Assembly: GCA_051294905.1 (NCBI GenBank)
Contig: CM119378.1
Location: 14,818,001-14,882,000, forward strand
DNA length: 64,000 bases
Reading direction: 5' to 3'
Source: Botryllus schlosseri
Taxonomy: Eukaryota
The stretch's first letter is position 1; every line of letters begins with the position of its first letter. Below are positions 26,299 through 46,088 of this stretch, one piece after another. The notes under the pieces are model-generated. The model worked only from the letters and a program-made list of their open reading frames with translations. It was not told the DNA's origin and searched no databases. The position numbers and the translations under genes were made by a program.

Positions 26299-26734
26299 AC
26301 TGTGCAGCCTCATTTTGCCGCCCCCTTAGAGCCTGCCGCCCCTGGCGCAGAGCCAAAAACGCCAATGTGGCTGCTACGCCACTGCCTATATGCCCACTTA
26401 TCCTGCTGTCCACTGTGGCGAACCAAGCTTACCGAGCAATAGGCAGATATCCAACGGGGAAGACAACCCACAAGTCGTGGACTCGCGAAGGCGAAGGTTT
26501 TCAATCACCAAGTTGAGAATCATCCGATTGTTTCCCCCTTCGTCACATCATGGATTGGTTCCGTAAACGGCTCCGATCTGTTGTGGTGCTTATCAAATAT
26601 ACTGAGACGCGTAAGTCTTGTTTAGTAGGTAATTTGATGGATTGGGATGGGGTTATTATTAATTAATAATAATAATAATAATAATTTAATTTTGATAAAA
26701 TTATTATTGTAGGTAGCGGAAGAGATAAAGATAT

Positions 26735-27019
26735 GAAGCGATGCGTGTCGCCTTTTTCGCAAGTCCTACCTCAAATTCATTCGTTCTGGCATTGTCTGTC
26801 ATTTGCGTGAAGAAGCTTCTGTAGCTGGTTAGTAGTAATACCGTGATCGGTACGTCCGCTCGGTTATCAGTTATTCGCGATCACATGCATGGTCGATAAT
26901 GAATGTAGCAAGTGAAGTCCTCAGGTGTACAACGGAAACGCGTAAAAACGTGGCTCCACTGTAAAGCTGTTTGTACCGCATGTCACTCTCGCGCTCCATT
27001 GGCTATGTCACGTGGTCTC
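26735..27019 (+). promoter_or_regulatory. Host-gene promoter with motifs shared with the Pumilio promoter
   Basis: GAAGCGATGCGTGTCGC 26735-26751, TCATTTGCGTG, and CCATTGGCTATGTCACGTGGTCTC 26996-27019 (ATTGG plus a GTCACGTG E-box). Confidence 0.7.
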
Positions 27020-27870
27020 TCCGAGCTCAACTAAAAACCGCGCAGACGCCGAGTGGAGGATTGATCACAGTAGCAAATGCATAGTATATGCATCCGGAGA
27101 CATCGCCTGATCGGTTGGATTGTTTTAGGTGAGTGTTCTATAAAACTAAAGTTGAACATATTGTTTATTCTCATAATCCTTCATTGGATGCCGTATCTAC
27201 TCGTTGATACATATATCCTTTCGCAATAGGGCGAAGCTACGTAGGCATTGGCGCATTGCTGACTACGTAGACCTACAATGCAAAATAAGGGCCGATACTT
27301 TTATCAACTTGTAACTGTGGTTAACTGAATGTAAATAGAAAAAAGGCAAAGAAAAATTTGAAGTTAATAACTTGTCACCTGATTTAGAGCATTGAGATGT
27401 TTCTTTACTTTTCATTCATTGTACATGCCTCCTCTTTACATCGCTGGGTGTCTGATTCTGTAGACTACTCGAAGTCGCTTCGACACCTTCTGTCTTTTCA
27501 TTGTATCGCATTTTTGTGGTGTATTGAACTGATGAAAATTGCTAATGAACCAATGATGATAATGAAACAGCTTTGCCTAGACGTGTGCCATTAACTATTA
27601 GCTCAGAAATCACCTTTTGTAAGTGTTGTGCGTGATATTTCGACTTAACCATTGCCTGTTCAACGTATTATGTAATTGTATTACACTGTCGTTTCTGGTT
27701 TTTAATTATCACTGCCTTTGTGTTGCAGCTATATGAATGTGAGCAAAGGGAGGATGCGTGCTCTACTGTACTACTATAGCCTATTGTAGCATGGTCAGCT
27801 CCGTCTGCAATTTCTTCAGCATGCTCCTGTCTGTTTGGTGAGTTGAGAATCTGATTCTTGATTATATTGT

Positions 27871-27933
27871 TGCTTGTGATGACAACCTCATATCTATGAA
27901 TGTTCATGTATAAACGTCCGTGTTACTGAAGCA
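27871..27933 (+). ncRNA. C/D-box snoRNA, U18-like guide, copy 1
   Basis: C box GTGATGA 27876, D box CTGA 27926, terminal stem TGCT/AGCA, guide GTCCGTGTT complementary to conserved 28S AACACGGAC. Confidence 0.8.
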
Positions 27934-28150
27934 TCGAATAGTATAGTACAAGTAGAATAGGGAATTTCAATCTTATTGACATTGAACATCTTTCCTAGAC
28001 GGTATACGGTGCTACAAGTGTCAACCCACGAAGATCTGTCAACTATGACATCATACAACACCTTACCTTGAAGATCCTTGGAGCCCGCAGTCATCAAATC
28101 ATGGTCCCGTCATCTTGGTGAGTTTACAATCTATTTCATGACTCTATGCC

Positions 28151-28219
28151 AGCTTATGATGATAACTATACAAGACTTCTATGAATCTCTTATGTATAAT
28201 TGTCCGTGTTACTGAAGCA
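28151..28219 (+). ncRNA. C/D-box snoRNA, U18-like guide, copy 2
   Basis: C box ATGATGA 28156, D box CTGA 28212, stem GCT/AGC, same guide GTCCGTGTTA-CTGA. Confidence 0.8.
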
Positions 28220-28415
28220 TCGAACTGTATGTTGAGAGTAGTAAAGTGACAATCAGTCCTTCCTTCTTACTGACATTGACCTGTTTTGTAGCTATGGGCA
28301 GGACGATCTCTATGTCACGTCGCTTTGGTTCTTCTCACAGGCACCACAGCATGAGCCTGTCGGTTGTCTACAGTTGATCAACGGTGAGCATTGAATCACT
28401 TTTTATCCCAATTAT

Positions 28416-28482
28416 GCCTTGTGATGATAACTACTTCGACCTTTATGAATGTCTATGTATATACGTCCGTGTTACTGAAGGA
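28416..28482 (+). ncRNA. C/D-box snoRNA, U18-like guide, copy 3
   Basis: C box GTGATGA 28421, D box CTGA 28475, stem changed compensatorily to CCT/AGG, same guide. Confidence 0.8.
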
Positions 28483-28738
28483 TGGAACCGTGTGTTGAGT
28501 TGTAATGTAAATATCAGTATTATTCTGACACCGATGTTTCTTTTAAGGCGATGATTACCATGTAACAAAAGTGAATCGTTTTGCGCTAATGTCTTTGCCT
28601 GTCAGCTGAAGTGAAGGCTGTATCTCCCATCACCAGGCATCTTGGGTCGGCCACCCTGCTCTACAGTCTCCACACAATGTGCACCTGTTGCCATCGTTAT
28701 TTCAGGTTAGCTTTACATCTTGATATTTGATTTTTAAG

Positions 28739-28806
28739 GGCTCATGATGATAACTACTTCGACCTTTATGAATGTCTTATGTATACTCGTCCGTGTTACT
28801 GAAGCG
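28739..28806 (+). ncRNA. C/D-box snoRNA, U18-like guide, copy 4
   Basis: C box ATGATGA 28744, D box CTGA 28799, stem GCT/AGC, same guide. Confidence 0.8.
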
Positions 28807-29024
28807 TCAAACAGTATGGTTCGGGTATTGTTGTGAAAATTAGATGTATTAATACTGGCGGTTTTTCTGCAGGTGGGGACCCGCTGAATTCTTCTTCTTC
28901 GTGTGCAGAAGCGAGATGAGAGGATACCATACCATGGTTTCGGCTGTCACTGAATGTCGGACAAACCTTGGGAGTAAGATCAGGTTGGTTGATAGCATAC
29001 AGTTTCTGTATATCATTCATTTTT

Positions 29025-29091
29025 TGTCCTTGATGATCTATTCTTGTTCACGAGTTTTCGATGATTACATCAAGAGGCTGTTTCTGAGACA
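29025..29091 (+). ncRNA. C/D-box snoRNA, U95/SNORD95-like
   Basis: C box TTGATGA 29030, D box CTGA 29084, stem TGTC/GACA. Guide AGAGGCTGTTT-CTGA pairs with 28S GAACAGCCTCT and matches the 3' end of human SNORD95 as I recall it. Confidence 0.85.
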
Positions 29092-29285
29092 AGTCATGTT
29101 ATAGTTCCCTCATCACTCTTGTGATCTAAATGATGAAAATCACTGTCGTTTTTAATTCAGGTGTACGGTCTTGAGATATGTATGAACCTTGGCGATGCTG
29201 CGACACAATTTCGCTGTTCAGAATTTTTGCAAGATCTACACAGCTGAGGTTTGTACTTGAGAAGCTAGTTATTATACACATCAGT

Positions 29286-29350
29286 GCAAGTGATGAATTT
29301 AACCGATGGATACTACTGATTATCTCTGACGACAACTATGGTTCTGATGC
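29286..29350 (+). ncRNA. C/D-box snoRNA, U62/SNORD62-like (host-gene copy)
   Basis: C box GTGATGA 29290, D' CTGA 29316, D CTGA 29344, stem GCA/TGC. D' guide CCGATGGATACT would pair with 18S AGUAUCCAUUGG, the site equivalent to human Am590, if this species has that variant. Confidence 0.8.
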
Positions 29351-30919
29351 GTAGTTCGATGTTTCTTCATGTATATCACAAGTGGCGTGAGTTTTTGATT
29401 GTTCGATTTATTTGCAGGTTTATGTAAAGGTCTCCGGAATGCACACTCGGCAGCACTTCATTCAACAGGGATTTCTAGGCCCCATGCTTGTTGCCTGGGG
29501 TGATGGTACTGGGTTGAGCATTTAAATATTTTGCAGTGTTCAAATATATAATGTAAGTGTTAACTGTTGCTGCATGGTGTACTCCCGGGTCTCAGATCAT
29601 CATTTGATCTGCTGAAAACGATTTTGATGGTGTTTTTGTAGTCCTGTCCTGTGTTGGTGAATAAAAGCTGACTCTTCATGTATTCGTGTCCTGTCTGAGA
29701 TAGTATAAAGGACGAAAGGTAGGCCATTGTTTCTTTAGGGAGCCCCGCCCGTCATATATTGAAGGTGAAGTGTTCCTACAGAAGTAATCTACATTCGAAC
29801 TACAGCTAAAATCATCAGGACTACCGTTGCGCTCCAGCTGCCGTGATGATCGATCTTGTGTGCCTGGGTAGGGTCCTAATTGAGAGTGGAAACTGACTTC
29901 GATCCGTGCAGAACGTGTTTTTTTACAATAAAGAAGTAGGGGTTTTCAAAAGTGACCCTTATCGTACCGGCTACTTGATAAAATTGTTACGTTACCTAAT
30001 TAAGCCTACACACCGAATTTGATTCAATTCCAACCAGTGGAAGCGGAGTTGTCAAATTTGGATTATGAATAAAATAGTATCTACGGCAGGGCCGACCAGC
30101 CCGTGGCACGCGAGGTAATTTCCGAAATTTCTAATATCAAAAATGGATTGCACATATTGTGAACTTGCAAGGCGAACCAAAAATTTGATTAGTCTGGCCC
30201 CAACACTTGAGATGTGATGACTAAAATATCAGTTCCGACGCATTGACAGATCCATCGGCCATTCACATATTGGTATTTCTTCGTACACTACAATAAAGCA
30301 GAATAATTTGCGATAGATTTATCAAAGGATAAAAATTTTCTACAAGCTTGGTGCAACATGTTGTCACTCGATTTCTTGTTTTTAATATTGTTGCCCTTTT
30401 GTGAAAATGGAAGAATACCTAATGTATCAGATTGAGTCCAACTATATTCGCGAGTACGAGACAAAGTGTCGTTCAACATAGCCTATGCGACATTGCGTTT
30501 GCGCCCGCAGTAAGACCGTCGACTATGAAACCTAGGCACGAAATGATTGACGCATGTTGGTCGCAGCTTTCGATATCGATATGCCCATGCGCCGAATAGC
30601 CCAGTCTTCGCAAACTGAGCCCAGCGATATACAACAGGCCCGGAATACAGTCAAGTGACAATATTATTGACCTATGAACTTCAAAAAATTTTTGCGCTTC
30701 ACGCGGCTAGTGGCCCGCGCAATGTCAATCAGACATGGGGTAATCGTGATTAGTAATCGTAATCGATTACGACGATTACAGCATTTTCAAGTAATCGTAA
30801 TCGCAATCGATTACATTCGAAAAAAATCCGAAGTAATCGTAATCGACTACTTCCCATATCTAATCGATTTCTCAGTGAAAGAACGATTACTTTTTATTTG
30901 TACAAGGACTATGATATAA

Positions 30920-31607
30920 ACTGAACATTCGTGAACAAGGAAAATATGTTATACCAGGTTCGTGACAGCAATAACACCATCTCATCTGTACCTTTACGTA
31001 CCAATTTATCGCCTTACTACCGTAAGCATCGAATTTTGCGAGTTGATGAACTATATCGCTTCGAAGTATCAAAAGTTGTTCACAAATATTTTTCCAATAG
31101 TCTGCCTCCTGTGTTTGATGACTTTTTCATACCTGCTAAACATGTCCATTCCCATACACGAGATCCTCGTCTAAAGGAAACATCTATACTTACCCCCACC
31201 CAATAGCAATGATCTATCGACTACTCGGGACCTATCATCTGGAATGCATATTACCACCACATATCCGTGAATTGCCTTATAATAGATTCAAAAAAGCCCT
31301 ACTTGATCACATCTTGTCGTTACACTAACACTGTTGCCCTACCTCGCCCAGACATTGCTTCATTGATCATTTGCCACCATTGTTTTTTTTTTTCTATTTT
31401 CCTTTAACTAAACATTTCTTTACAGCCAGACTGTTCAGAGTCAAGTGTACCTGTTTGATGCTGGTGTGATCAGACTAGATGACCTTCACGGTCTTATCGA
31501 TCATTCCTATCTAATACCGAATACTGTGCGTGCACGCATATTTTCTGTACCACCATCACTGCCGTTCGTTATGTATTTTGGTTCGATGAAAATAAAGACT
31601 CTCTCTC
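30920..31607 (+). mobile_element. 5'-truncated LINE (CR1/L2-group) 3' end
   Basis: ORF remnant PYYRKHRILRVDELYRFEVSKVVHKYFSNSLPPVFDDFF..VHSHTR is typical of CR1/L2-clade ORF2 C-termini. It is followed by frameshifted GP.IWN and FKK.L segments and a 3' UTR ending AATAAA..(CT)n. Confidence 0.7.
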
Positions 31608-32515
31608 TTTTCAAACGCCACTGCTCATTATTACGTCAGAGGCAGCCTATTAGCTTTGCGCGTCATTGTGTAAAACGTATCCACAGTAAATAGATATTCG
31701 ATGTACCTACGTCGTCCGTTAGTCTGATTGTAAGAACACCCGCCGTGCTGTCTATCAGGTTATCAACGCGTTCCACACGCCACTATTACCTCGCAGCAGT
31801 ATCATTTATCTCCGCTCTTCCTATAGTTTAAAATAGTAACTTATGTGTTGATGTTTGGTTATGCTTATGCTTAGTTTAGTTAAAGGCAGTTTGACCGTTG
31901 CTGCTTGGCGAGCAGTAGGTACGTACCAGGTACGTACCAGTACGTACGTACACCGGACAAAGATTTGAAATTTGGTACTCGTCAAATAAAACATTGCGGT
32001 TTCCACAACGAAGCAGTAAAAATCAACAGCTGGTGATATATATATTATAAGCGACCCGTTTTGCCATTTGTCGTAACGGCAGCTTGCAGTACAATATTTG
32101 TATTAAGTTGAAGGCAGAATTTTATGTTCGCTTCGTCTTATTCTCATATGACTCTACTTGAAACGGGCGCCTATCGTTAATTCATAATTCTTTATTCAAC
32201 ATTGGGACTTGCCGCCGTGGACATGGGCTTATGTATCATGTTAGCGTGGGTTGTAGCTGGTACGAGGACCAAAACAGCAATTCGTCCCCCAGTCCAAACG
32301 TTGGTCTTTGGGCCCCCGTAGGGTGGTAATCGCAAGTTGAAGACTGAATTTCGTCAATAAATTTAGTAATTGCAATATATTACTACTAATTTTTAATCCT
32401 CTCTCAGCCCGCGATGGTCAGATATACCTGCAGAGTTTATTTGTTTCGGGTAATCATGATGTTTGTCAACTACCACAGACATATTACACCAGGCCGAGTT
32501 CATGCATTTTCGATT

Positions 32516-32706
32516 CTGCCGACTTGTAGCACGGCCGACTTCTAAGCTTTTTGTAAGACATATCGCTTACGTGGATGAGGCGGTGAGGAGGGGCCTAGAT
32601 AAACATCCAACACTTTGGTAGGAATTCCGAAGTCGACCTCGTTCAGACTCGAACCCGCAATCCATTGGTGTTGCAGCCATGGATTATACCACTGCGCTAT
32701 CTCGCC
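32516..32706 (-). mobile_element. tRNA-derived SINE, family B
   Basis: Minus-strand head GGCGAGATAGCGCAGTGG..GGGTTCGAGTC, with body shared with 56808-56960. Confidence 0.75.
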
Positions 32707-32711
32707 ACACA

Positions 32712-32783
32712 ATTACTTACCTATTACTTATTACTCACCTATTACTTACCTACTTACCTATTACTTACCTATTACTTACCTAT
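32712..32783. repeat. Simple repeat (TATTACTTACC)n
   Basis: Visible imperfect tandem array. Confidence 0.85.
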
Positions 32784-34429
32784 GGTTTCTTGTTATAATT
32801 ACTTTAGTGTATGTTCTTAATTCGTGACCTCCGGTTTGTTATATAATCAAAAGATATTGTAGTCAGTAGTGGCTCAAACGTAGTAGACTAAAAGAAAAAC
32901 TTTCGTGAGACGCATAAACAAATTGTCATGTCTTCATATCTGACCGCATGTCTAGCAACTCAAGTTGTAAATAGGGTCAGTGGTACTAGGGTCAGTACTA
33001 GGGTCAGTGGCCACATTAACTACAATAGGACTTGAAAACATTTTCATCATGGTTAAAAAGCATTCATTCAATGCGGCCGTTGAACTTAACAATCAAGTCA
33101 AATAATCCATTGGTTTGCTGGTCAGATCGCGTTGTAAAACGTGTTGTAACACCGCCTGCACTTAATTAAGTCTGGTGGTGAGCAGACTTAAATTTGATTG
33201 CCGATCCAGACGTATTTGAGTCTGAGCATACTTTTTGACGTGAGTTGAGTAACGAAATCGTTGCTGAGTAGAGAAGCGATACTCGACACCAAAGGAATCG
33301 GTCTTCACCATCAATTATAAACTCCAGATTCCAAGCAAAGCAAGTGAAATTTTTGAATATCAATTTTGTTTGTTATAGATTGATTTTTTATTATTTTTGT
33401 TGGATTTTCCAACGTCAAGGGGAGCCGCAAGTTGGCTAGCTGAGCGAGCCACATGCGGCTCTCGGACCCGCGGTTGGCAATCATTGATCTAGAGATGATT
33501 TTAATTTTAATTAGATCTCTCGAAAATACTCTATAACTTATGTTGGCTTACGAAATACTTTTTGAGTACCCTTCGAGCTCGCTCTCTCCCCTATTGGGAA
33601 ATTTGGGGTGCGGCAGTTATTGCCCTGGCAAGAATGCAAATCGTTGGGCGCGATAAATTGACGTCTATGAAAATGGGCAATGGATACATTATGACGTAAC
33701 AAACAAATGACGCATCTTTTTTAAAGGGAGTTTGTTATCTCATTAGGCCTTTTCAGCGCAATCCATATATTGTCTTCCAACATAGCTTCTAAGATGCAAA
33801 ATAAATGTAATCGTGAGTAATCGTGATTACTTTTCCAATGTAATCGTAATCATAATCGACTATACTTCCTGATTTTGCTGTACTCGTAATCGTAATCGTA
33901 ATCGCGTCATTCAGAAGTAATCATAATCGCAATCGATTACATTCATGAAGTAATCACCCCATGTCTGGTACTGATACTGATACGCCTCGTCAGGGATATA
34001 TAGAATTAGAAATCCCTAGACGCGTGTAGGTGTCAAAAGTCTGATGCAAAATAGTTTTATCACTTAAATCCTGTAACTCGCGATCTCAGTTTTAGAGGAA
34101 TTGGGAACCCTATCTTTGTCCGACGTGGACATTGGAACTTGTAGAGCAATTTTCATAGAGTGAGCATGATTGTGGTTACTCGTAATGTATTGGGTGTCAT
34201 TGGGTCGGCGAATTTGGCGATATTATGGCTGGAAAAATTATGGCCAACTTCGCTCCCATGACCAGGAAATTCAAGTTGACGTCCCTGTCCAGTGTCCTTG
34301 CACGCGAGCGCGACCTGAATGCAGATCGGCGATGCGTGCTGAGGTTGTGGTGCGTATATATGATATGGTGAACGCTGAACGTGCGTGCATGCTGTTTGCT
34401 GCTCAAAACTAATTGATATCAAATATTTT

Positions 34430-34570
34430 TGAAAAAAATCGCTAGAATATCGCTAAATATTTTTAAAAAGTCGCTAGATTTATCGCTAGTCGCTAGATCG
34501 ATATTTTTGTCGCTAAACCGAGTAAAAAATCGCTAGATCTAGCGACAAAATCGCTAAATTGGCAACACTG
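34430..34570. mobile_element. Single MITE end with TCGCTA subterminal repeats
   Basis: Repeated ATCGCTAG/TCGCTA units ending in TTGGCAACACTG (reverse complement CAGTGTTGCCAA). Confidence 0.55.
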
Positions 34571-35495
34571 TCTGCGCCAGGGCCGACAGGCTCCAAGGGG
34601 GCGGCAGAATGAGGCTGCACAGTGCAATGTTCACTGTACACAGCCGGCTAAAAATAGCGTAATTGGTAGTCCTATAGCTGGCGACCAGAGAGCTAAAATT
34701 TAATCGAACTAGTCTTAATCGAAAGCACAAATCAAAATGTGAGCATGGCTATCGAACCACTCCGAAATGGCCGTCAAGGCCGATTGTTCCGAACAATCGG
34801 AGCGCTGCAACACAATGACCAATTAACCATGGTAATGGGAATTGTATTAAGCGATTATTCGAAACAATGCCGATTTTCAGACCTTGATATCTATTTCGGG
34901 GTGGTCCCGTTGCCGCATTAATTTCCTTCTCCAGCTGCAGGTCGGCCACTCCTGCCCTAAACAGTCTTATAGCGTTCATCAGTCTACCGAAAAGATTTCG
35001 TGTTGAGGATTTCCATGCCGTCACCCCCGCTCAACTAACCCACGTGTTCATCGTGTGATTTTCGAAAAGAACAATTAATTACGGTATTTCGTCCGTGTCA
35101 TAGTGCGAGCCCAATGAGAAATCCAAGTTGAGTACAATATCCCCATCGTTTGCCCTCCGTTGCACCCGTGTTACTACCGTCGTTGTGAAGGACCATAGCA
35201 TAACTAGTTCGTGACATCAAGCGACTGTAATCAAACGAGACTAAGGCGATTGCTTCACCATTCGTCATTTCCTTGATTGTTTCGCAAAATTGATCCTATT
35301 TATGGGATATAGCAATTGAAACATTGAGATTGGAGATGCGACGTGCAACAAGCATTCATCGGAGTGCGATTCAATTGTGGGAACAATTGTGGATTGGTCG
35401 TCAACATGGTTAGGTCATAATGCAATTCGTTGTCATTTTATAATCTTAACAATGAAGTATTATAGGTAGGTTTGGCGGCAAGACGAAATAGATAG

Positions 35496-35901
35496 GAAGC
35501 GATGCGTGTCGCGTTTTTCGCGCGCCAAATTCCTACATGGAATTCTTTTCTCATACCTCATTTGCGTGGAACTACTCGTGTGGAAGAGTGTTGCAGTTGG
35601 GCCGTGTTGTAGTTCATCGGTAAAGGTCAAGCTCATCGGGCCTCGCCAACTAAGCGTATAGTCAGTAATGCACCGTAGCAGAAGAAGTCAGCAAGTGTTT
35701 CGAGGCTACTCACCAAGCCTGTTTTAGCAGAAAATTGGTTTTGTACCTCTTGGTGCATGTGATCGTCGTGCGCCATTGACTATGTCACGTGGTCTCGTCC
35801 CATAATTCCAAGCTTGACTGGAGAAGCTACGGCTCAGGGAATGATGGCGTGTTAGCATCTATGTATATCTAAAGACATCGTTTGAACGCCTGGATTGTAT
35901 C
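35496..35901 (+). promoter_or_regulatory. Pumilio promoter and non-coding first exon (donor after 35901)
   Basis: GAAGCGATGCGTGTCGC 35496-35512, CCATTGACTATGTCACGTGGTCTC 35773-35796, and GGATTGTATCAG|GTAGGT paralogous to host GGATTGTTTTAG|GTGAGT. Confidence 0.7.
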
Positions 35902-36579
35902 AGGTAGGTGTATTCTCAATCGATAGCAATCATATTTGTGTCTTACATTATCATATACGGCGAAATGATTACTTATAGATAGGCGATAATTATCATTTCC
36001 AAGTCGCGCGACTGCAAAACGCGTTGACTACGATTGAAAATACCTCTGTCGCTTTGGTCGTCTGGTCAGCTGTTGCTGCAATCTAAGTTACGAATATTTT
36101 GACAGGCATTTGTAAATACTGTACAATGCAAAGGCCTGCCAATGTGGCTGGTGGTCAAGGCGGATTGTGGCCAGATGGAGTTCCGACTTATGGACAACTG
36201 CCATTGCAGTCGTTAAATCTGAGAAATACTGCGGTAAGATGGATACTCATACAATATTATGTAGTTAGCCGGTCTTTCTGTGTTAGATTTTGTTTGTTAA
36301 TGGAATTAATGTGTTATTTTGCATATATATATAGTAATTTTCAGTATTCTCATTGTGGTGTTGACAATGTTCCAATCTAATGTATTTATGTAGACAGCAA
36401 GGTTGATTTGCGCAAGGAAGGTGGTTGGTTAGCATTCATAATTTTGTTGAGATATTAACCTGCAATTCTCCCATCTGCAATTCTCCCGTAACTCGCAATT
36501 GATTGCACATAAATCAATATTGAAGATACATGTGTAGCCTTACTGTATATTGAGCCATATCTGGTAAGGACTAAATAAA

Positions 36580-37852
36580 GGCCCTGTGGATATAAAGCTG
36601 TATCAGCTGTATCACCCTGTGGATATAAAGCTGTATCAGCTGTATCACCCTGTGGATATAAAGCTGTATCAGCTGTATTCCGATCTTGGAGGCCGATTTT
36701 ATCATGAATTAGTAAAAATTTTTGCGCTTAACGCTGGCTCACTAAACAGTACAACAATAATTTCGTTGCAAAAGCGAACAAGGTGATGGGGGACGGTTTA
36801 TCATAGGGTTACCATACGTCCTCTTTTAAGAAGATTTGTCCTCTTTTTTGACTTTTTTGAAAGTGTCCTCGGAGGACGCCCTTTTGTCCTCTTTTGAAGA
36901 TTTAGGTCAAATTTAGAGCAAAATGTGAGTGATATGCCGTAAATTAGCACAGAAGTGACGCTCCGGCGGGTATTTCGGAGTGAAAAACGGTGATTTGAGC
37001 TATGAGCGAAAAGTTGACCTTTTTTTTTAATCAACCAATCACAAAGTGGTAAAATGCACCGATTTTTGAGAATTCTTCTCCGGTTTTGCAAGTCTCAAAT
37101 TTCTGAAAAAGCGTCCTCTTTTTAGATTTCCGAAATATAGTAAGCCTAGTTTATCACCCTATAGGAGCCCAAGATTCAAGGTTTTTTGGGGAGCCTGACT
37201 AAGTGCTGTTTCGTTCCTGCCAACGGGTATACACACCCGGAGATGTTTAATTAATTATTATTCGAGGGGTCCTACCTTTTCAAACACACCTCATTCAGCT
37301 CTACCGGTCGGTAGCCTAAATTAGATTACGTGAGCAACTGAGCATAGAGACGTTAAAAAAATCGATAGCAATCTATATGCAATTCCCGATCATATATTGA
37401 CCGACTCAATCATGAAATATAGAAATTTTTCTTTCTTCGCGCATGTAGGTGAGAAGAGCTGACTCACTAAATGTGTGACAGCCTACTATACTATTTCGCG
37501 CATCCCAGACATAGTATAGACCTGATACTAATTGCAGAGTGATACCTGGGTGAATCTCGGTACGGTTTGTCTATGATATGGGAGCAGGGATGATTCTCAA
37601 GTTGAAGTAATTAAAAAAGTAATATTAAAAAAATCAAGAATTGTTTGAACACAAGACACCGATTACATACAGGTAGAGTGATACAGCTGATAGCTGATAC
37701 AGCTTTATATCCACAGGGTGATACAGCTTTATATCGACAGGGTGATACAGCTGATACAGCTTTATATCCACAGGGTGATACAGCTGGTACAGCTTTATAT
37801 TCACAGGGTGATACAGCTGGTACAGCTGATACAGCTTTATATCCACAGGGCC
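36580..37852. mobile_element. Foldback/Mutator-like non-autonomous element with tandem-repeat TIRs
   Basis: Ends GGCCCTGTGGATATAAAGCTG.. in inverted orientation, built from ~33-bp units, with a perfect 9-bp TSD CTAAATAAA (36571-36579, 37853-37861). Confidence 0.85.
36804..37148. mobile_element. hAT MITE nested in the foldback element
   Basis: TIR TAGGGTTACCATA / TATAGTAAGCCTA, with perfect 8-bp TSD GTTTATCA. Confidence 0.9.
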
Positions 37853-37939
37853 CTAAATAAAGCATAAACATGTATGTTTATAAAGTGTTCATTGCAGGGC
37901 GCTGGGACAAAATTATGGAATTTAGAGAGCAGCACCGCA

Positions 37940-40900
37940 ATGAATCCTGGTTCCGATAGAGCGTCATTGCTCGGTACGAAGCAGTGGGGCCGAGAATCTG
38001 GCGGGGCACCATGGGGGCAACTCAGCCCAACTGAAAAGTCTCCTGGGTCCAGTCAGAACATTCCACTGACTTCGTCAAGCTTGCTTGCTGCGGCTGCGGG
38101 TAAATTTTTATAATGAGGATGTTGTAGCAGCAAATATCCTGTGTGTGGTGTCTTCAGGTGGTTTCAGTGCAACAGACTCCAGCGCCAGTAACATTCAGGG
38201 ACGTGGAAATCTGTCATTCGATCTCGTGGACTATATGGCTAGTGGTTCTTCTTTGATGAATCCGTCTGTTTTTGTAAGAATTTTATATTCATTATTGGTT
38301 TTCAGTGTTTTGATTTGAACAATTTTGTCCAGAATCCTGGGATGGTTCATGAAAATAGAAACTGCAGCAGTGCTCAGCCTGGTCAGTCCTCATATGGTGA
38401 AGCAAAGACACATACTGAGAACACCAGGTGAATACATTTTCAGAATCAGGAGTACACCTTCAGATAACCCTAACAATATCAAATTCTAAAATGAAAAACC
38501 TCAGCATGCGGCTTTCATTCGTTCGTCTTTGGAGACAGTCACATTACGACAACATAGCAGACACAAGGTTGACATTCATCCTTTCCGAATTCCAACGGTT
38601 TAAAACGTGACCATGGCAGATATCTGTTGGATTGGAATGATTGTAAAGTAGTAGTTTGATCGATTGGTTAATGAGCTACACAGTCCTGCTTGACAAATCT
38701 ATGTCCCTTACCATTTTTTAATTAGCTCTGCACAGTTTCGATCATGTCGTTTTTTTACTCGATATGGACAAGCACGATCCCCTTTAGCTCCTTGCATTTC
38801 ACAACCATTATCTTGTTGGCTACTGAAAAATTTGAGATTGCATCGTTTTGGTACTTGGTATATACGCTTGCTGCCTTTTGACAATGTATGCCCTGTTGAG
38901 CTACTAAGCGCATTATCAATGCCATCAGGGATATGTCACTCAGTGTTGAGTAGAAGGTCGTCAAGCCAAGGATTCTACTCGAGACAATTGGAATTTGACG
39001 TCGAATGTGTTGTTGTTTAGCAGCAGAGACGGATCGCCACAGGAAGACAGATCAACCGCTCATCGGCATTCTGGGAACCAGCAGCAGTTGTCGCGTAACG
39101 GTAGAATATCCCCGCGTTCGATGCTGGCGCAGCACACTGGCAGTGTAACTACCACCACCAACCCTGCCGAGGAATCTGCGGTGGTAAACCAGTCCGAATC
39201 TCCAAAGGAAACAGACGCAGCCGATGCGGTGGCAGGGAACGGTATGTTGGTAGTGGAAATATGGTGGAGTAGTTCACTATACGACCAACTTCTCAGCACT
39301 CCGACTACAACTTTTCTAATATTACACCGAGTTCATCAGCTCATAATTATTACCAAGTGAATCAACCCATTTTTACACGACTTGACTCATAGATGGGAAT
39401 TGAGCTGATATACGTTACAGTTTTGTTATTATCGCCAAGTAAACCAACCCATTATTTTGATTTCAAAGACAAATTGTGCTCACAGATGAAAATTAGATAG
39501 TGCTTGTGAACGTTCGCCTGTGTGAAAAACTTGATGAATTCTGTAGTTGTAATGTTTTGACAACGTTTTAGGAACAATTTGGTCTTATTCGAAATTGTCG
39601 AGTCGGAGCATTTTAATTTACTCGGACTCCAGTCAGAACTCGTTTCCCCTACTCCAGACTCCAAAGGGTGTTCTAAATTGCGACATTATGGCACTGTCTG
39701 TTTTTCATGGCATGATTCGATATTCAATATTCATCTGTTTTAGGCGGTGGAAATTCAGCTACGGCGGTAGACCCCGGGCAGACAAGCGAACATTCGCAGG
39801 CTGCCAGCTTTCCTGGTGCTGTCGACGCGGAGTTGGGTCAGGTGCCGGCTGGACAGCCGATCGACGCAGTCTTGCAACAGCAGATGAGTCAGCTGAACCT
39901 CGATTATACGGCCCAGCAACAAGTGAGTGTGTGCTGCCTGTGTATCGTGCTTGGCGAGGTAACAGCCCGGTGTGTTTCCAGTCGCTGGCCGTGCAGCTGG
40001 CGATGCAGCAGCAATACATTCTGGCGCAGCAGCAGCAACTGGCGGCTATGCCTGGCATGTTTTTGCCGAACCCTTACGTCATAACGGCTAACGCGGGTGG
40101 TGAGTTTTTATCTCATTTGTCCAGTACTGAACGGAGGTTGTAAAAGTCACACAAGTCGAGTAGATGTGACTATGCATATTTCTACTTATAAGTGTAAGTG
40201 GCGATATCCAAGAAGTTTCAAAACTACTTCGACACTGAAAATTGAGTATAAGGTTATGAAAAGTACCACTAGTTGAAAAAGTATTTGATCGAAGGGTCGC
40301 ATACAGGAGTGTCATGATAGGTCTCAAGACTTATCGGTAGGGATGATGTGAACGTGAGGTTCGCGTTCTGTGTGTGAACCTCAAATTTAAGAGGTTCACG
40401 TTCCCAAACAAACCTTGCTCTGTTCTGCACTGTGAACCTTTTCATGTATTGCAGTTTTTCACGTCATTCTAACATCTTTGCTTCAATTTCTTTGCATTTC
40501 AACTATAGAACCACACTATGCATGGCTCTGGCAACATAAAAAATCAACACTAAACGAGAATGCACCTTGCCAATCTTGATAAATTTTACTTGCTTCGTTG
40601 CAAGAGTGTGCTCGAAATATTCTGCTTTCTGTTTGTGAATATTTTGTCACTCTCTGCTGTGAGCTTGCCCCGCAATAATACATCAATAATGAAATACACT
40701 ACGTGTAGGTAGTCAGGGGGGGTGTTATCGGTAGCAATGGAATCGGTCCAATGTGGGAATTGTAGTTTTGCCTAAACTAAAAGTAGAAGTACTCTTAACA
40801 TATTTCCATAAAAGTAATTGGTGCAAATAAGCAAAACCTGCTTGAAATCTCCAAATAGTTAATGCTAGTACTTCGCTGCTGACCGCCTCTGGTCGCAAAT

Positions 40901-43900
40901 CCGGTATAACCGTGTTTCCTTACTCCGACAGGGTATCCCGATCCCACTGGAGGAGGTCAATTTCCTATCATGCCCCAATACCCGTCTTATCCGAGCTGGC
41001 CCAATGTTGCCTACCCTTCCATGATAGCGCCTCACATGGCTTCATCGCAGCAAGCTGCTGCCCCTGCCACCAGCCTCCAGGTTTGTATGGCATGATCTCC
41101 AAAAGACTTGGATTGAATTTACCCATTGCTTTTTGTACAGGGCGGCAGACTATCTCAAACCGATGCGCAGATACCAAGATCGCAATCGCCACCCGTCCAG
41201 GCGGTGACGTCTGAACCAGGCGACCCGCCGACGTCTTTGCCGCCCCCTGTGTACCCGGATATGTTTAACGCTGCCGCGTTTGCGGGTCAGGGCGTCAATC
41301 CGGCGATGGCCATGTCCGGCTCTGGGTACCAGATGATTCCAGCTTACTACGACCAGAGCGGGGCTCTCATTGTGAACAGGGCCCCGGTCCATCTGCTGGC
41401 GCCTGGGATTCCTGCCCCGATGTTTCTCAACGGATCGCAAAGTGAGTGCCTACCGGTAGTTGATTCAGGAATGATGTTAACTGATCTGTGGTGGGGAACT
41501 TGAATATAGCTCTATTTCAAAAGTATATTTATCATAGCGTTAGTTCAACTCGAAAAACTTATTGCATGCCCTTTGCCCACTTTCAAGAGTTATAGGCACG
41601 ATGAAGGTAATAAGAACAGAGATCAATTCAAAACTAAGTGATAAGGGCGCATGAGAAGTTCATCAAGATGATGGATGTTATTATAAATCTACTTTCGCAA
41701 GAATGATTGTTGACTGCTCCTAACTTTCTGTTGATTAATGCCGCATACGGACAGTCGGACATGGTGCTCAATCAACATTTATCCCTTGATATTAACTATT
41801 GCAGTAAGAGATGCGTTGGCGGCGTGTCTGTAATTGAACCGTTTTAAGGTCAAAATGCTGGGATGTACACCAGTCCCAGTATGAGCGGTGGCAGTACCCC
41901 GGTTCCTGTACCGCCAAGCGGTTACAATCCTGGTAACATGGGTGGATTTGGCAGTTTGGGGTCGATCGCTGGAGGTCAGTTTTATCTCGCGAGTTGATCG
42001 TTCAGTTTTGACCTCGAGTTCGTTGCAGCTATGGGCAGTCAGTGCTCCACGCCGCAGAGAAGGGACTCCTTCTCTGACGTTACGAAACATCCGTCCTACG
42101 GAGGTCCCATGTCGCAGTTCTACAGCACGTTTGGGATGTCTCCGGCCGGCAGCGGTATGGGGATAGGCGCGATATCACCGTCTCCTGGACCACTGGGGGG
42201 CATGGTCGGATCTGCCCACAGCCACCACAGCATGAGCCCGCCACCTCTGTCGTCGCCCGGTGGATTTTTTGGTGAGTTGTAATTTGTAGATTCGCAAGAT
42301 TTCGATGTTGGCTTGTGATATTTTTTTAGGAGATAACGAATGTCTATGTATACTCATCCGTGTTACTGAAGCGATCGACAGTTTGATTTGCTCGGTTTTG
42401 TGAAAATCGGCTGTGCTATACATGTGCTGTGTTTTCTCAGGCGGTGGTGGTCACCGGATGTTTTCCGCGGCCCCAGGAGCGGAAGCGAGATACCGCAGTG
42501 GGTCCATGTACGGTTCTGCCAATGTCTTCGGCAATTCCGGGAGTTCACTGTTCCCTCCCACCAAGATCAGGTAGGCTGTCAGTGTCAGCAGAGGTCGACT
42601 TCTTTGAAGTGCTCGTTGGTGTTGCCTACCAGATTTGTTGGGTCCGAGAATGCTCACTTATTTAGTTGACTGAAAATTCTCTATACTTTTTTGCCTATTT
42701 GTAATGGTTGCTCAAGTGATTGATTTTAAACTGCTTCTTGGTTAGTTGTTGTGGTCAAAACTAGGCCTATAATAGAATATTCAAGTACTTGAAAATCCTT
42801 ACTTGTACTCGAGTAAAAATGGTTGCTTAGAGCACCTTCAGTTGTTAGTGATATTTCGACTTCAATTATTCATTCCATGATATTGATGTATCTATGAATT
42901 TTCAATTACACATCAAATCCCCCCCCCCCGTCATTGTAGCACTTGGCTTCTAGTGACGGAAATGACAAAGACTCGAACAGTTTGTTTTCTTTCTTCAGGC
43001 CAATATCGACCAAAGACGTGTCGCAGATGTCGGGACGCAGCAGACTACTGGATGACTTCAGGAACAACCGTTTCCCGAATCCGCAACTTCGAGACCTGTC
43101 GGGCCACATTGTTGAATTTTCACGAGACCAGCACGGCTCGAGGTACGCGCTCCTTCAGTCTAATGTCAGATACGTGCGAATGCGAGTGATGTATTTCAAC
43201 CGATGGATACTACTGAACTTCCATGTTGTCGACTACGGTTCTGATGCAAGATTCGTGAACGTTGGCGTATCTGATACTGCCGGCTGTATGTAATAATGTG
43301 ATTTTTCTTCCCAAAGGTTCATCCAGCAGAAATTGGAACGCGCCACCCTGCAAGAAAAGCAGATGGTTTTCAACGAAATAGCGAGAGCCGCTTATCAGCT
43401 GATGACTGATGTTTTTGGGAACTATGTTATTCAGAAGTTCTTCGAATTTGGCTCGCAGGTACGTGGTTTTCAACGATTTATCGTTTGATAGGTTCTCCAG
43501 GTTAATGATGATACTTCAGTTCTGACTCTATGATGTCAAAACTCTCTCTTACTGAAACCCCCACTGCGTAGCAGTATCACATAGTTTTAAGCTGCATGCC
43601 ACAGGGTTGACATCCTTATTTTGTTGCAGGAGCAGAAATTATCTCTCGCGAAATGCATAAGGGGCCACGTGCTCCCTTTGGCGCTGCAAATGTACGGTTG
43701 TCGAGTGATTCAGAAGGCTCTGGAATGCATACCCCAAGAAGACCAGGTTTGAGAGCCGTTCGTGTAACCTGAACTTGTGGCCTGTGACGATGATACTGTG
43801 TCCTTTATGAGCTTTTGTGATTTTTGCTATCTTTCCGAGGCTGAATAGCGATCTGTAGCAGCAGACTGCGTGAAACATCTGGGGCTGGGTTTGATTATAC

Positions 43901-46088
43901 TTCTGGTTTCAGGTGGAAATAGTCAAAGAACTGGACGGGCATCTCATCAAATGCGTCAAAGACCAAAACGGGAACCACGTTGTCCAGAAATGTATCGAGT
44001 GTGTCTTGCCCGTTCATTTGCAATTCATCATCGACGCTTTCAAGGGACAGGTGTTGCATCTTGGCTTGCTGTGGATGGGGTTTGGTTGTCTTTATCTTTG
44101 TTGCTCTGCAGGTGACACAGCTGTCCATGCATCCTTACGGGTGCAGGGTGATGCAAAGAATTTTGGAGCATTGTACTCCGGAGCAGACTGCGCCTATATT
44201 GGAAGAACTGCATCAGGTGTGTTGGTTCGGTGGTGATTTGTTTCTGTAGATTCTAATGTGTTGTTTTCAGGCCGAGTCGCTTGTCAGCGATCAATACGGG
44301 AATTACGTCATACAACACATTCTGGAGCACGGCCGCCCGGAGAACAAAAGCAAAATCGTTCTCGGTATCACGGGAAAGGTTTTCAAGCTGAGCCAGCATA
44401 AGTTTGCGAGGTACGGGTGGTCGGTTTCTGGATTATTGCTATCTCCCTGCAAGTTGTGTTTTTGTCATTTTGGACAAAGTGCAGCAGTGTAAACCTGTTT
44501 CTTGTTTTCGTGACAGTTTTGTATTGCTGCGCTTACACTAAATTGACAGCTGTCTTCGTTCTCTTGGTTGGGCAAAAGTGACTGTGGTAAAAAAAGTGTA
44601 GAAACTGTCAAAATAATTTAACTCTCATTAGCGGGAAGTTTGACTCGCTTGACTCGAATCATGAAAATAGATACTGGATTCAGATTCGAGTACTCAAATC
44701 GTTGCGGCCAGCCTTGGCAGCGCCGTTAGTTCTCTTTTATTTCGGCAGCAATGTCGTCGAGAAGTGCGTCTCGCACGCTTCGCGCATGGAAAGGGCGATT
44801 CTGATCGAGGAAGCCTGTCAAGAGCCGGAGGCTCTCTTGCACATGATGAAAGACCAGTACGCCAACTATGTGGTGCAAAAGATGGTGGACGTCGCAGAGA
44901 CGGCTCAACGAAACGTATGTGTAAATTTGTGGTCGGTTGCACATGACGTGGCAATTCCCAGCACATGCTGCAGTAGTGTAGTTTCAAAACTAAGATTTGG
45001 TTGAATGTCTCTCACGTTCGCCAGTTGTTCCTAAGACATGTCAGTGTTCTTTCCAATTCTCTACTAGTTGCTGACGATACCCCTGATGAGTGTCGGCTGA
45101 AAATATTTCGATACGTATATACTATTAAATTAGGCTTACCATACGTCCTCTTTTAAGAGGATTTGTCCTCTTTTTTGACTTTTTTGAAAGTGTCCTCGGA
45201 GGACGCCCTTTTGTTCTCTTTTTTGAGATTTTGTCCTCTTTTTTGAAAATTTAGGTCAGATTTAGAGGAAATTGCGAGTGATATGCCGCAAATTAGCGCA
45301 GAAGTGAAGCTCCGGCGGGTATTTCGGAGGGAAAAGTGGTGATATCAGCTCTGAGCGAAAAGAAGACCTTTTTTTTTTTTTTTTTGGTCATCCACCTGGC
45401 AATGTGGAGTGAAAAACGTGATTTTGAGCTCTGAGCGGAAGAGATGACCTTTTTTTTTTTCTTCTAAGTCAACCGATCATGAAGTGGGAAAAATTTACCG
45501 GTTTTTGAGAATTCTTCTCCAGTTTTGCATTTCTGAAAATGTGTCCTCTTTTTTCATTTCCGAAATATGGTAAGCCTATATTAAATTGTATACTCCGGAT
45601 AAGGATAGATTTGATTTGATTGAGGGGTCTCGTGCATCCCGGTTATTCCCATGTCATGACAAAACTACAAGTGGTAGTTCAAAGTTGAAGATCTGAAAAC
45701 TTGTTGGATGTCGCATACCTTCAGCCGACAATCGGCGGCTGCTACTTTTTGAATTGCAATTTCCGCAATACAGGGTGTATTTCGCATGGTTCTCGTGGCA
45801 ATTTCACTTGTAAAACTATAAGCACTTTTTACTGACCCCCTCTGGATGGTGTCGTCTTTATTCTCATTTTGACGGATTTGTGTTTGGTTTCAGATGCTCA
45901 TCACCAAGATACGGCCCTACACCGCTCAACTCCGCAAGTTCACATACGGCAAGCACATCATCGCCAAACTTGAGAGATTTCTGGTCAAGAGCGGAGCCGC
46001 GCCCGGCAGTGCCCTCGGCGCTGTCACGATGCCGCAAGGTCTCGTGTCTCCGCCTGTCGCTACGACCGTCGTGCAACCCAACCCTTGA
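37940..46088 (+). CDS. PUM: Pumilio (PUF RNA-binding protein), 19 coding exons: 37940-38099, 38158-38273, 38333-38427, 39021-39241, 39744-39922, 39982-40099, 40932-41080, 41141-41441, 41849-41974, 42029-42271, 42441-42570, 42999-43142, 43317-43458, 43630-43746, 43913-44050, 44112-44216, 44271-44410, 44749-44914, 45894-46088
   Basis: Phase-consistent GT-AG model. [23 protein letters not shown], and eight PUF repeats with canonical recognition motifs SRFIQ, NYVIQ, CRVIQ, NHVVQ, CRVMQ, NYVIQ, SNVVE, NYVVQ, then [16 protein letters not shown]-terminal low-complexity exons are slightly less certain. Confidence 0.95.
42311..42372 (+). pseudogene. Degenerate U18-like snoRNA in a Pumilio intron
   Basis: 3' half ATGTCTATGTATACTCATCCGTGTTACTGAAGCG matches the host copies. 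The C box is altered (GTGATAT followed by a T run) and the guide carries G>A. Confidence 0.75.
42865..42925 (+). pseudogene. Decayed remnant of the U95-like snoRNA in a Pumilio intron
   Basis: ATTCATT..TTGATG(T)ATCTAT..TTTTC..CATCAA aligns to host 29012-29073, but the guide and D box are replaced by a C run. Downstream GTCAT..GTGA..AAATGA also aligns. Confidence 0.55.
43182..43247 (+). ncRNA. C/D-box snoRNA, U62-like (Pumilio copy)
   Basis: C box GTGATGT 43186, identical D' guide AACCGATGGATACTA-CTGA, D box 43241, stem GC/GC. Confidence 0.8.
43500..43559 (+). ncRNA. C/D-box snoRNA, U26/SNORD26-like
   Basis: C ATGATGA 43505, D' CTGA 43522, C' ATGATGT 43530, D CTGA 43552, stem GGTT/AACC. Guide AACTCTCTCTT pairs 11 nt with 28S AAGAGAGAGTT, in the same register as human U26. 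Confidence 0.85.
43784..43848 (+). ncRNA. Candidate orphan C/D-box snoRNA
   Basis: C-like GTGACGA/ACGATGA, D'-like ATGA, C'-like GTGATTT, D CTGA 43841, lying 68 nt from the 3' splice site like the others. No target recognised. Confidence 0.5.
45131..45578. mobile_element. hAT MITE, same family, in the last Pumilio intron
   Basis: TIR TAGGCTTACCATA / TATGGTAAGCCTA, with perfect 8-bp TSD TATTAAAT. First ~85 bp nearly identical to the 36804 copy. Confidence 0.9.

What the first reader, a model, noticed from the sequence alone, without database searches (positions are those of the whole stretch)
27871..43559. Reciprocal partitioning of snoRNA cargo between parent and daughter gene
Intron by intron: the U18-like snoRNA is intact four times in the host but has a broken C box and a guide mutation in Pumilio (42311-42372). 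The U95-like one is intact in the host (29025) but decayed, with a C run over the guide, in the equivalent Pumilio intron (~42865-42925). The U62-like one is kept in both. The U26-like and orphan ones exist only in Pumilio, because the duplicate ends before those introns. This is subfunctionalisation of RNA cargo rather than protein, and it would explain why the dead duplicate is retained.
Basis: partly seen in the sequence, partly recalled or inferred. Interest (0 to 1): 0.82.

Follow-up and report, generated by a model that had tools for sequence, protein, structure and literature searches.

The report
Pumilio duplicate turned snoRNA host gene
A partial copy of the Pumilio gene has lost its protein code but is still transcribed and spliced, and its introns carry intact guide RNAs for ribosome modification, one of which is crippled in Pumilio itself, so part of the RNA cargo has moved to the copy, though less cleanly than first claimed.

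Summary
Pumilio (+ strand, clean ORF over 12 exons, 40932-44914) has box C/D snoRNAs in consecutive introns. At 26.7-29.7 kb lies a partial tandem duplicate of it, covering promoter and exon 1 plus the exon 4 to exon 7 segment.

The duplicate is transcribed and spliced at GT..AG sites and has 16-19 stops in every frame. It holds four intact U18-like snoRNAs, one U95-like and one U62-like.

Pumilio's U18-like copy has a damaged C box (GUGAUAU) and a G>A guide change. Its 3' half, however, is as conserved as in the working copies (82-92% against 39-59% in the flanks). It therefore died recently, or is only weakened.

The claimed U95 relic in Pumilio is not statistically secure (p about 0.02-0.18). 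That stretch matches a box-less segment in the duplicate's first intron much better.

The U62-like snoRNA is in both genes. It is also found in the Pumilio of three relatives, in other introns, and those relatives lack U18, U95 and U26 guides there.

The U26-like and orphan snoRNAs are in Pumilio only.

Verdict: a real non-coding snoRNA host gene born from Pumilio, with partial, probably stepwise cargo partitioning. "Reciprocal subfunctionalisation explains retention" is only partly supported. Earlier first-stage notes of this scan flagged the same locus.

The parts
26687..27128 (+). Host gene 5' region and exon 1 (RNA contigs start at about 26801; exon ends at 27128), paralogous to the Pumilio 5' region
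   Evidence: blastn 26687-27178 vs 35441-35952: 61% over 531 nt, E 6e-20. The CCATTGG/CACGTG block is shared (family D20). An RNA contig covers 26801-27126 and is spliced on to 27727.
27598..27686 (+). Segment in host intron 1 that is homologous to Pumilio intron E (42822-42911) and has no C/D boxes
   Evidence: Local alignment z 5.6-6.2, p<1/2000; three-way alignment A6. The segment is not repeated elsewhere in the window.
27729..29690 (+). Host gene exons 2-8 (27729-27838, 27999-28118, 28292-28385, 28548-28705, 28874-28983, 29161-29249, 29419 to about 29690) with six snoRNA-bearing introns; non-coding
   Evidence: Every intron is confirmed as a GT..AG joint in RNA reads or contigs. The spliced RNA is 1281 nt, has 16-19 stops per frame, a longest ORF of 76 aa and no blastx match to Pumilio. 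AATAAA lies at 29661.
27871..27934 (+). U18-like box C/D snoRNA, host copy 1
   Evidence: C box GTGATGA at 27876, guide GTCCGTGTTA, D box at 27926, 4-bp stem, D box 69 nt from the 3' splice site.
28151..28220 (+). U18-like box C/D snoRNA, host copy 2
   Evidence: C box ATGATGA at 28156, D box at 28212-28215. An intron-containing RNA contig covers 28088-28384.
28416..28483 (+). U18-like box C/D snoRNA, host copy 3
   Evidence: C box GTGATGA at 28421, D box at 28475-28478, compensatory stem CCTT/AAGG.
28740..28807 (+). U18-like box C/D snoRNA, host copy 4; positional counterpart of the Pumilio copy
   Evidence: C box at 28744, D box at 28799. Closest of the host copies to the Pumilio copy (35/38 identical in the 3' half). 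Weak Rfam snoU18 alignment of 13.6 bits.
29024..29092 (+). U95-like box C/D snoRNA, intact, found in the host gene only
   Evidence: C box TGATGA at 29031, D box at 29084, stem TTGTC/GACAA. Guide plus box is identical to the SNORD95, snoZ119 and Afu_300 consensus lines. No second copy in the window at up to 2 mismatches.
29284..29353 (+). U62-like box C/D snoRNA, host copy
   Evidence: 81% identical to 43181-43247, E 3e-10. The D' guide AACCGATGGATACTA+CTGA is conserved.
35441..35903 (+). Pumilio 5' region and first (non-coding) exon, parent of the host gene's 5' end
   Evidence: Homology found. The splice donor at 35903/35904 was read from the sequence and is inferred, with no RNA evidence.
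40932..44914 (+). Pumilio coding exons, 12 of them within this span, including the PUF repeats
   Evidence: Spliced ORF without stops. PF00806 PUF is recorded on orthologous exons in the fetched loci.
42311..42374 (+). U18-like copy in Pumilio intron D: C box GTGATAT, 5' half rearranged, guide G>A, D box and stem kept
   Evidence: Alignments A1 and A4. The 3' half is 82-92% identical to the host copies against 39-59% in the flanks, Fisher p 8e-6 to 1e-4. D box 71 nt from the 3' splice site.
42822..42929 (+).
   Evidence: Similarity to the host U95 is marginal. Similarity to host intron 1 is significant.
43180..43250 (+). U62-like box C/D snoRNA in Pumilio intron F, intact, with the family-typical C box UGAUGU
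   Evidence: SNORD62 is the best Rfam match (15.5 bits, E 0.92 in a 91-nt search; its consensus C box is also UGAUGU). Orthologues are present in L001, L003 and L011.
43500..43560 (+). U26-like box C/D snoRNA in Pumilio intron G
   Evidence: C box ATGATGA, D box CTGA, stem GGTT/AACC. The guide matches the SNORD26 consensus; the best overall Rfam score is SNORD52 at 24 bits.
43779..43843 (+). Orphan box C/D-like RNA in Pumilio intron H with non-canonical boxes (UGACGA, CCGA)
   Evidence: Weak Rfam matches to snoU83, ceN63 and snoR117; the ceN63 consensus also has a CCGA box. 5-bp stem, and D box 74 nt from the 3' splice site.

Best explanation
An old tandem duplication copied the Pumilio promoter and first exon together with the exon 4 to exon 7 segment and its snoRNA-bearing introns. 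The coding exons in between are missing from the copy, and its exons have decayed. The copy is now a spliced non-coding RNA whose only evident output is its intronic box C/D snoRNAs: four U18-like (after amplification of one exon-plus-intron cassette), one U95-like and one U62-like. Each sits 69-76 nt upstream of its 3' splice site, the position at which splicing-coupled snoRNP assembly works best.

From their guides, these snoRNAs should direct 2'-O-methylation of conserved LSU and SSU rRNA sites, the sites targeted by U18, U95 and U62 in other eukaryotes.

Pumilio still hosts U62-like, U26-like and an orphan snoRNA. Its U18-like copy has lost the G-A end of the C box (stem II of the k-turn) and one guide pair, so it probably no longer assembles. 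Supply of the U18-like guide, and of the U95-like guide whatever its history, therefore now rests on the duplicate.

The partition is partial and looks stepwise. U62 is still redundant. The U18 loss in Pumilio is recent relative to the duplication. Whether Pumilio ever carried U95 is open.

Shown: homology, splicing and expression of the host RNA, loss of coding capacity, box and guide states. Inferred: snoRNA accumulation, rRNA targets, non-function of the Pumilio U18 copy, dependence on the duplicate.
For: Duplicate homology, including the promoter and exon 1. Pumilio ORF. Host RNA spliced at all seven predicted GT..AG introns in RNA reads and contigs. One exon carries a 16-nt indel variant in the RNA. 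No coding capacity. Five U18-type guides against 0.29 expected. Intact boxes, stems and a compensatory stem change in the host copies; C-box and guide lesions in the Pumilio copy. U95 guide identical to the SNORD95 consensus and unique in the window. snoRNA cores 84-90% identical among host copies against 28-69% in the flanks, which indicates purifying selection. All D boxes lie 69-76 nt from the 3' splice site: for the corrected D-box positions.
Against: No read-level evidence that any of these snoRNAs accumulates; the runs used are polyA-type libraries or assembled contigs. The Pumilio U18 copy keeps UGAU of the C box, its D box, stem and internal boxes, and its 3' half is as conserved as the working copies, so it may still work weakly. 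The U95 relic is not significant. The host U18 guides pair with only about 9 nt of rRNA, and the rRNA of this species was not available to check. The rest of the genome could not be searched for other copies. Relatives show no U18 or U95 in Pumilio.
Confidence: 0.6

Rival explanations
1. Dosage and redundancy, not partitioning, is the main story. The duplicate was kept and its U18 cassette amplified because more snoRNA was useful, or simply tolerated. U95-like was acquired by the duplicate after the duplication. The recent damage to Pumilio's U18 copy is a neutral side effect of five-fold redundancy and explains nothing about retention.
For: The U18 cassette is amplified four times, with old, diverged units. 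The Pumilio U18 copy's 3' half is still 82-92% identical to the host copies, so it was constrained for most of the time since duplication. The U95 relic is not significant. Relatives have no snoRNA in the equivalent intron E. Unchecked earlier notes report similar cassette amplifications elsewhere in this genome.
Against: Today the only intact U18-like and U95-like genes in the window are in the duplicate. A colinear weak match to U95 at the right distance from the 3' splice site exists in Pumilio intron E.
Confidence: 0.3
2. The Pumilio U18-like copy is still functional or hypomorphic, so U18 is not partitioned at all. The variant C box UGAUAU would be tolerated.
For: The copy keeps GUGAU, the D box, the terminal stem, the internal D'/C' boxes, 8-9 nt of guide and the canonical 71-nt distance to the 3' splice site. 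Its conservation equals that of the working copies.
Against: Loss of the G6-A7 end of box C removes stem II of the k-turn, which is needed for NOP56, NOP58 and fibrillarin assembly (own knowledge: Watkins et al. 2002). The copy also has a 5'-half rearrangement and a guide mismatch.
Confidence: 0.2
3. The high similarity of the Pumilio copy's 3' half comes from a short gene-conversion tract from host copy 4 into Pumilio intron D. In relatives that intron holds a U62-like snoRNA. Pumilio would then never have had a working U18.
For: In L001, L003 and L011 the positional homologue of intron D holds a U62-like snoRNA. Only the 3' half of the Pumilio copy resembles U18, and it is closest to host copy 4.
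Against: The duplicate has U18 in intron D and U62 in intron F, as Pumilio does, so this layout most simply predates the duplication. The Pumilio 5' half shows no significant U62 similarity (read by eye; not tested by alignment statistics).
Confidence: 0.1

Closest known systems
Non-coding snoRNA host genes (UHG/SNHG1, GAS5, Drosophila dUHG genes)
   Same: A spliced transcript with no conserved ORF whose introns each carry one box C/D snoRNA. Exons evolve freely while snoRNAs and splice sites are conserved. Cassettes of one exon plus one snoRNA intron are repeated.
   Different: The origin is visible here: a partial tandem duplicate of the neighbouring protein-coding host (Pumilio), with its promoter and first exon co-duplicated and exon remnants still alignable. 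A TOP-type promoter and NMD sensitivity were not tested.
Duplication-degeneration-complementation (subfunctionalisation) of duplicate genes
   Same: Two copies with overlapping sub-functions in which different sub-functions are disabled in each copy: protein coding in the duplicate, the U18-like snoRNA in the parent.
   Different: The sub-functions are independent intronic RNA genes plus the ORF, not enhancers or protein domains. The parent's loss looks recent, U62 is still redundant, the U26-like and orphan difference is a truncation, and the U95 leg is unproven.
snoRNA paralogy by within-gene or segmental duplication, and snoRNA mobility (e.g. the four SNORD58 copies; Hoeppner et al. 2009, PMC2817437)
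   Same: The same snoRNA is repeated in successive introns. U62-like occupies different Pumilio introns in different species (A and D in L001 and L011; F here).
   Different: Here the duplication also produced a separate transcription unit.
Vertebrate PUM1 as a snoRNA host (own recollection: SNORD103 and SNORD85 in PUM1 introns; the one paper found holding both PUM1 and SNORD103A was not read)
   Same: A Pumilio gene hosts box C/D snoRNAs in its introns.
   Different: The snoRNA families differ. No relationship was tested.

Membership tests
Box C/D snoRNA (intron-encoded) | C box RUGAUGA near the 5' end and D box CUGA near the 3' end | tested here: met
   Met for host U18 copies 1-4, host U95, host U62 and the U26-like snoRNA. 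Pumilio U62 has UGAUGU, the SNORD62 consensus form. The Pumilio U18 copy (GUGAUAU) and the orphan (UGACGA, CCGA) deviate.
Box C/D snoRNA (intron-encoded) | Short terminal stem bringing boxes C and D together | tested here: met
   3-6 bp in all of them. Copy 3 has a compensatory change, GCTT/AAGC to CCTT/AAGG.
Box C/D snoRNA (intron-encoded) | One snoRNA per intron, about 70 nt upstream of the 3' splice site | tested here: met
   D box to 3' splice site is 69-76 nt for all ten elements. The host introns are confirmed by RNA joints.
Box C/D snoRNA (intron-encoded) | Stable accumulation as a 60-90 nt RNA bound by fibrillarin, NOP56, NOP58 and SNU13 | not testable with these tools
   Only polyA-type libraries and assembled contigs were laid on the region.
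U18 / SNORD18 | Guide GGUCCGUGUUU complementary to LSU rRNA ...AAACACGGACC... | tested here: met
   GUCCGUGUU is shared with the Rfam snoU18 and GlsR9 consensus lines. The rRNA pairing itself comes from own knowledge; this species' rRNA was not available.
U18 / SNORD18 | Guide placed upstream of D'; sequence reaches the Rfam gathering score | tested here: not met
   The guide lies upstream of the terminal D box. The snoU18 score is 13.6 bits against a gathering score of 47. The snoRNA therefore works like U18 but is not shown to be an orthologue.
SNORD95 | D guide AGAGGCUGUUU followed by CUGA | tested here: met
   15 of 15 identical to the consensus. The overall score of 20 bits is below the gathering score of 55.
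SNORD62 | C box UGAUGU and D' guide ..AUAGAUCCUU followed by CUGA | tested here: inconclusive
   SNORD62 is the best Rfam match for the Pumilio copy but is weak: 15.5 bits against 39, E 0.92. The guide is similar, not identical. It is conserved in four lineages.
SNORD26 | Guide AACUCUCUCUU followed by CUGA | tested here: met
   11-nt guide plus box identical to the consensus, but placed at the D box and not at D'. Score 17 bits against 44.
Non-coding snoRNA host gene | Transcribed, spliced, no conserved ORF, snoRNAs in the introns | tested here: met
DDC-type subfunctionalisation | Both sub-functions present in the ancestor and complementary loss in the two copies | tested here: inconclusive
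   Met for coding capacity against U18. Not shown for U95. U26 and the orphan differ by truncation. The timing of the U18 loss looks late.

The most novel reading that the evidence does not exclude
A protein-coding snoRNA host (Pumilio) gave birth, by partial tandem duplication that included its promoter, to a non-coding snoRNA host gene. Stepwise complementary loss of intronic snoRNAs has made this pseudogene-derived RNA gene the only source of two conserved rRNA methylation guides. That would be a caught-in-the-act example of how dedicated SNHG-type genes arise and become indispensable.

A further, weaker possibility concerns intron D. Its ancestral resident in relatives is U62-like, and in this lineage a U18-type guide replaced or split from it, which would be a change of guide specificity in place.
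Probability: 0.35. Interest if true: 0.65.

Novelty: new variant of a known kind. Interest (0 to 1): 0.47.

Why it matters
Non-coding snoRNA host genes are common, but their origins are mostly invisible because their exons evolve freely. Here the parent gene lies next door and the copy still aligns to it in promoter, exon remnants and introns. The route from coding host to dedicated RNA host can therefore be read directly.

If the duplicate proves to be the only source of the U18-like and U95-like guides, it would show that intronic RNA genes alone can preserve a dead duplicate. The system is testable, because the copies differ enough for copy-specific reads, and a single deletion should remove two defined rRNA methylations.

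Tried and rejected
- Rfam at gathering thresholds found nothing in the window. Only relaxed, small-range searches gave weak family matches.
- The search of protein representatives with one Pumilio exon returned only two fragments. One had no retrievable DNA and the other was not on record.
- The contig of the closest relative (83-93% aa identity, SRR25569784) could not be read.
- A metagenome scan for U18-type D-guide snoRNAs gave more than 120 hits, mainly archaeal sRNAs and assorted eukaryotes, none related to these copies.
- L002 and L004-L010 carry Pumilio but none of these guides.
- The idea that the host exons are alternative 5' exons of Pumilio was rejected. The host RNA has its own duplicated promoter region, ends near an AATAAA at 29661, and no joint leaves its last exon.
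- The idea that the segment shared by host intron 1 and Pumilio intron E is a dispersed repeat was not supported within the window.
- Literature searches found no description of reciprocal snoRNA partitioning between a host gene and its duplicate.
- The rRNA of this species was not available, so guide-target duplexes were not computed.

Full report
GENE MODELS. Reading 40-45 kb and joining GT..AG-bounded exons gives a stop-free Pumilio ORF over 12 exons (40932-44914) with the PUF repeats. Upstream, 26.7-29.7 kb contains short exons separated by introns of about 170 nt. blastn links this unit to Pumilio at three places. The first is 26687-27178 against 35441-35952 (61% over 531 nt, E 6e-20), which is the promoter and first exon. 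The second is the exon 4 / intron D / exon 5 region around 42208-42491. The third is the end of exon 6 plus intron F, around 43114-43247. The duplicate is therefore internally deleted (it lacks the N-terminal coding exons) and truncated at its 3' end. One cassette of an exon plus the U18 intron has been amplified to four units.

RNA EVIDENCE. Two raw-read RNA-seq runs and two sets of assembled contigs were laid on 26500-30500. They show joints at every predicted intron: 27129-27728, 27839-27998, 28119-28291, 28386-28547, 28706-28873, 28984-29160 and 29250-29418, all GT..AG. Spliced contigs run from about 26801 to about 29556 and 29770. The transcript ends near an AATAAA at 29661, and no joint leads on towards Pumilio. 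One exon carries a 16-nt indel variant in the RNA. The spliced 1281-nt RNA has 16-19 stops in each frame, a longest ORF of 76 aa, and no blastx similarity to Pumilio. The unit is thus an expressed, spliced, non-coding RNA. These libraries cannot show whether the snoRNAs themselves accumulate.

snoRNA BY snoRNA.
- U18-like. TCCGTGTTACTGA occurs five times, against 0.29 expected. The four host copies have canonical boxes and stems, with a compensatory stem change in copy 3. Their cores are 84-90% identical, while the intron flanks are 28-69% identical, which is the signature of purifying selection. The guide GUCCGUGUU is the U18 guide seen in the Rfam snoU18 and GlsR9 consensus lines, but it lies upstream of D and not D'.
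- U95-like. The copy at 29024-29092 is intact. Its guide plus box is identical over 15 nt to the SNORD95, snoZ119 and Afu_300 consensus lines. It is unique in the window.
- U62-like. It is present in both genes. The Pumilio copy's UGAUGU C box is the SNORD62 consensus form, and SNORD62 is its best, though weak, Rfam match.
- U26-like. The guide matches the SNORD26 consensus.
- Orphan. It has UGACGA and CCGA boxes.
- Position. All ten elements place their D box 69-76 nt from the 3' splice site. From my own knowledge (Hirose and Steitz 2001), this is the optimum for intronic C/D snoRNA processing.

THE PUMILIO U18 COPY. Its C box reads GUGAUAU. The stretch between box C and D' is rearranged, and the guide has G>A at its distal end. 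From established knowledge of the C/D k-turn (Watkins et al. 2002), losing G6-A7 removes stem II, which is required for assembly of the core proteins, so non-function is likely. The 3' half (D' to D plus stem) is nevertheless 82-92% identical to the host copies. That equals the host-to-host values, against 39-59% in the flanks (Fisher p 8e-6 to 1e-4). The copy was therefore constrained for most of the time since the duplication, and inactivation is recent. The alternatives are that it still has some function or that it was refreshed by gene conversion.

THE U95 'RELIC'. The host U95 against Pumilio intron E gives p 0.03-0.18, depending on scoring, with two competing locations. The whole-intron comparison gives z 1.4, against 13 and 12 for introns D and F. 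A 3'-end-anchored alignment gives p about 0.02 and places the shared ACATCAA 86 and 88 nt from the two 3' splice sites, but unrelated snoRNA introns score as well. By contrast, 42822-42911 is clearly homologous (z about 6) to a box-less segment of host intron 1, 27598-27686. I put the chance that Pumilio intron E once held a U95-like snoRNA at roughly even.

RELATIVES. Exon-level protein searches recovered genomic Pumilio contigs from other species.
- L001 (54-62% aa identity in tblastn) and L011 (about 60-64% in the less conserved exons) each carry two U62-like snoRNAs. These lie in the introns equivalent to 41081-41140 and to intron D.
- L003 (71-76% aa identity) carries one upstream of the exon 5 homologue.
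- The guide AAC(C/A)(A/G)ATGGATACT and the stem are conserved.
- None of the three has U18, U95 or U26 guides. L001's introns equivalent to E, F and G are only 55-71 nt long. L011 has a different C/D candidate in the G-equivalent intron.
- U62-like is therefore an old resident of Pumilio that has moved between introns. U18-like, U95-like and U26-like are lineage-specific in Pumilio, or were lost in those relatives.
- The identity of these organisms is unknown. An earlier, unchecked note calls the present genome a sea squirt.

READING. The most likely history has four steps. Pumilio in this lineage carried U18 (intron D), perhaps U95 (E), U62 (F), U26 (G) and the orphan (H). A tandem duplication, followed by internal deletion and truncation, produced a second transcription unit driven by a copy of the Pumilio promoter. 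The exons of that unit decayed while its snoRNAs, splice sites and snoRNA-to-3'-splice-site spacing were kept, and the U18 cassette was amplified. Much later Pumilio's U18 copy was damaged. The present state is a partial partition: the protein, U26 and the orphan in the parent, U18 and U95 in the duplicate, U62 in both. This is compatible with neutral complementary degeneration. However, the late U18 loss cannot be the reason the duplicate survived early on; dosage or an early U95 event are the candidates.

COMPARISON WITH WHAT IS KNOWN. Non-coding host genes and repeated exon-plus-snoRNA cassettes are known (Tycowski et al. 1996, cited in PMC2831330). Stable host association, mobility and within-gene duplication are also known (PMC2817437). 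I found no report of a non-coding host visibly born from its neighbouring coding host with complementary cargo. I therefore rate it a new variant of a known kind, of moderate interest.

LIMITS. There are no small-RNA data. The rRNA of this species was not available. The rest of the genome was not searched. The closest relative's contig could not be read.

Noticed in passing
window 44462-44550 (+), Pumilio intron 44411-44748: A strong, nearly perfect hairpin (-36.6 kcal/mol, z -6.6 against shuffles). Weak Rfam matches to mir-4524 and to a plastid psbA hairpin model. A candidate intronic miRNA precursor.
   Followed up: partly
window 41660-41745 (+), Pumilio intron 41442-41848: A possible decayed C/D element: AGATGATGG ... 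CTGT, with flanking ATCAA/TTGAT complementarity. Read by eye only.
   Followed up: no
window 27438-27571 (with 25023-25426 inverted): A repeat fragment inside host intron 1 with very high RNA and contig depth and loose ends on both sides, so it belongs to a dispersed, expressed repeat family.
   Followed up: partly
window 36800-37150 and 45130-45580: Two copies, 85-97% identical, of the same repeat. One lies in the Pumilio 5' intron region and one in the intron after exon 44749-44914.
   Followed up: no
L011 5984-6036: A box C/D candidate (C box UGAUGU, D' and D CUGA, stem GATC/GATC) in the relative's intron equivalent to the U26-like intron here, but with a different guide.
   Followed up: partly
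L003 35-47: The D guide of the relative's U62-like snoRNA reads CCAGTGTTTCTGA, one inserted base away from the U18 guide CCGTGTTTCTGA. This could be chance (rough p 0.02-0.04) or a trace of a double-guide ancestor in intron D.
   Followed up: partly
window 29448-29482: The host's last exon contains CAGCAC-TTCATTCAACAG, which resembles the spliced Pumilio exon 6 / exon 7 junction (CAGCACGGCTCGAG|GTTCATCCAGCAG). Possibly chance.
   Followed up: no
window 28951-28966: A 16-nt stretch of a host exon is missing from some RNA reads and from one contig. This indel polymorphism fits exons that are not under coding constraint.
   Followed up: partly
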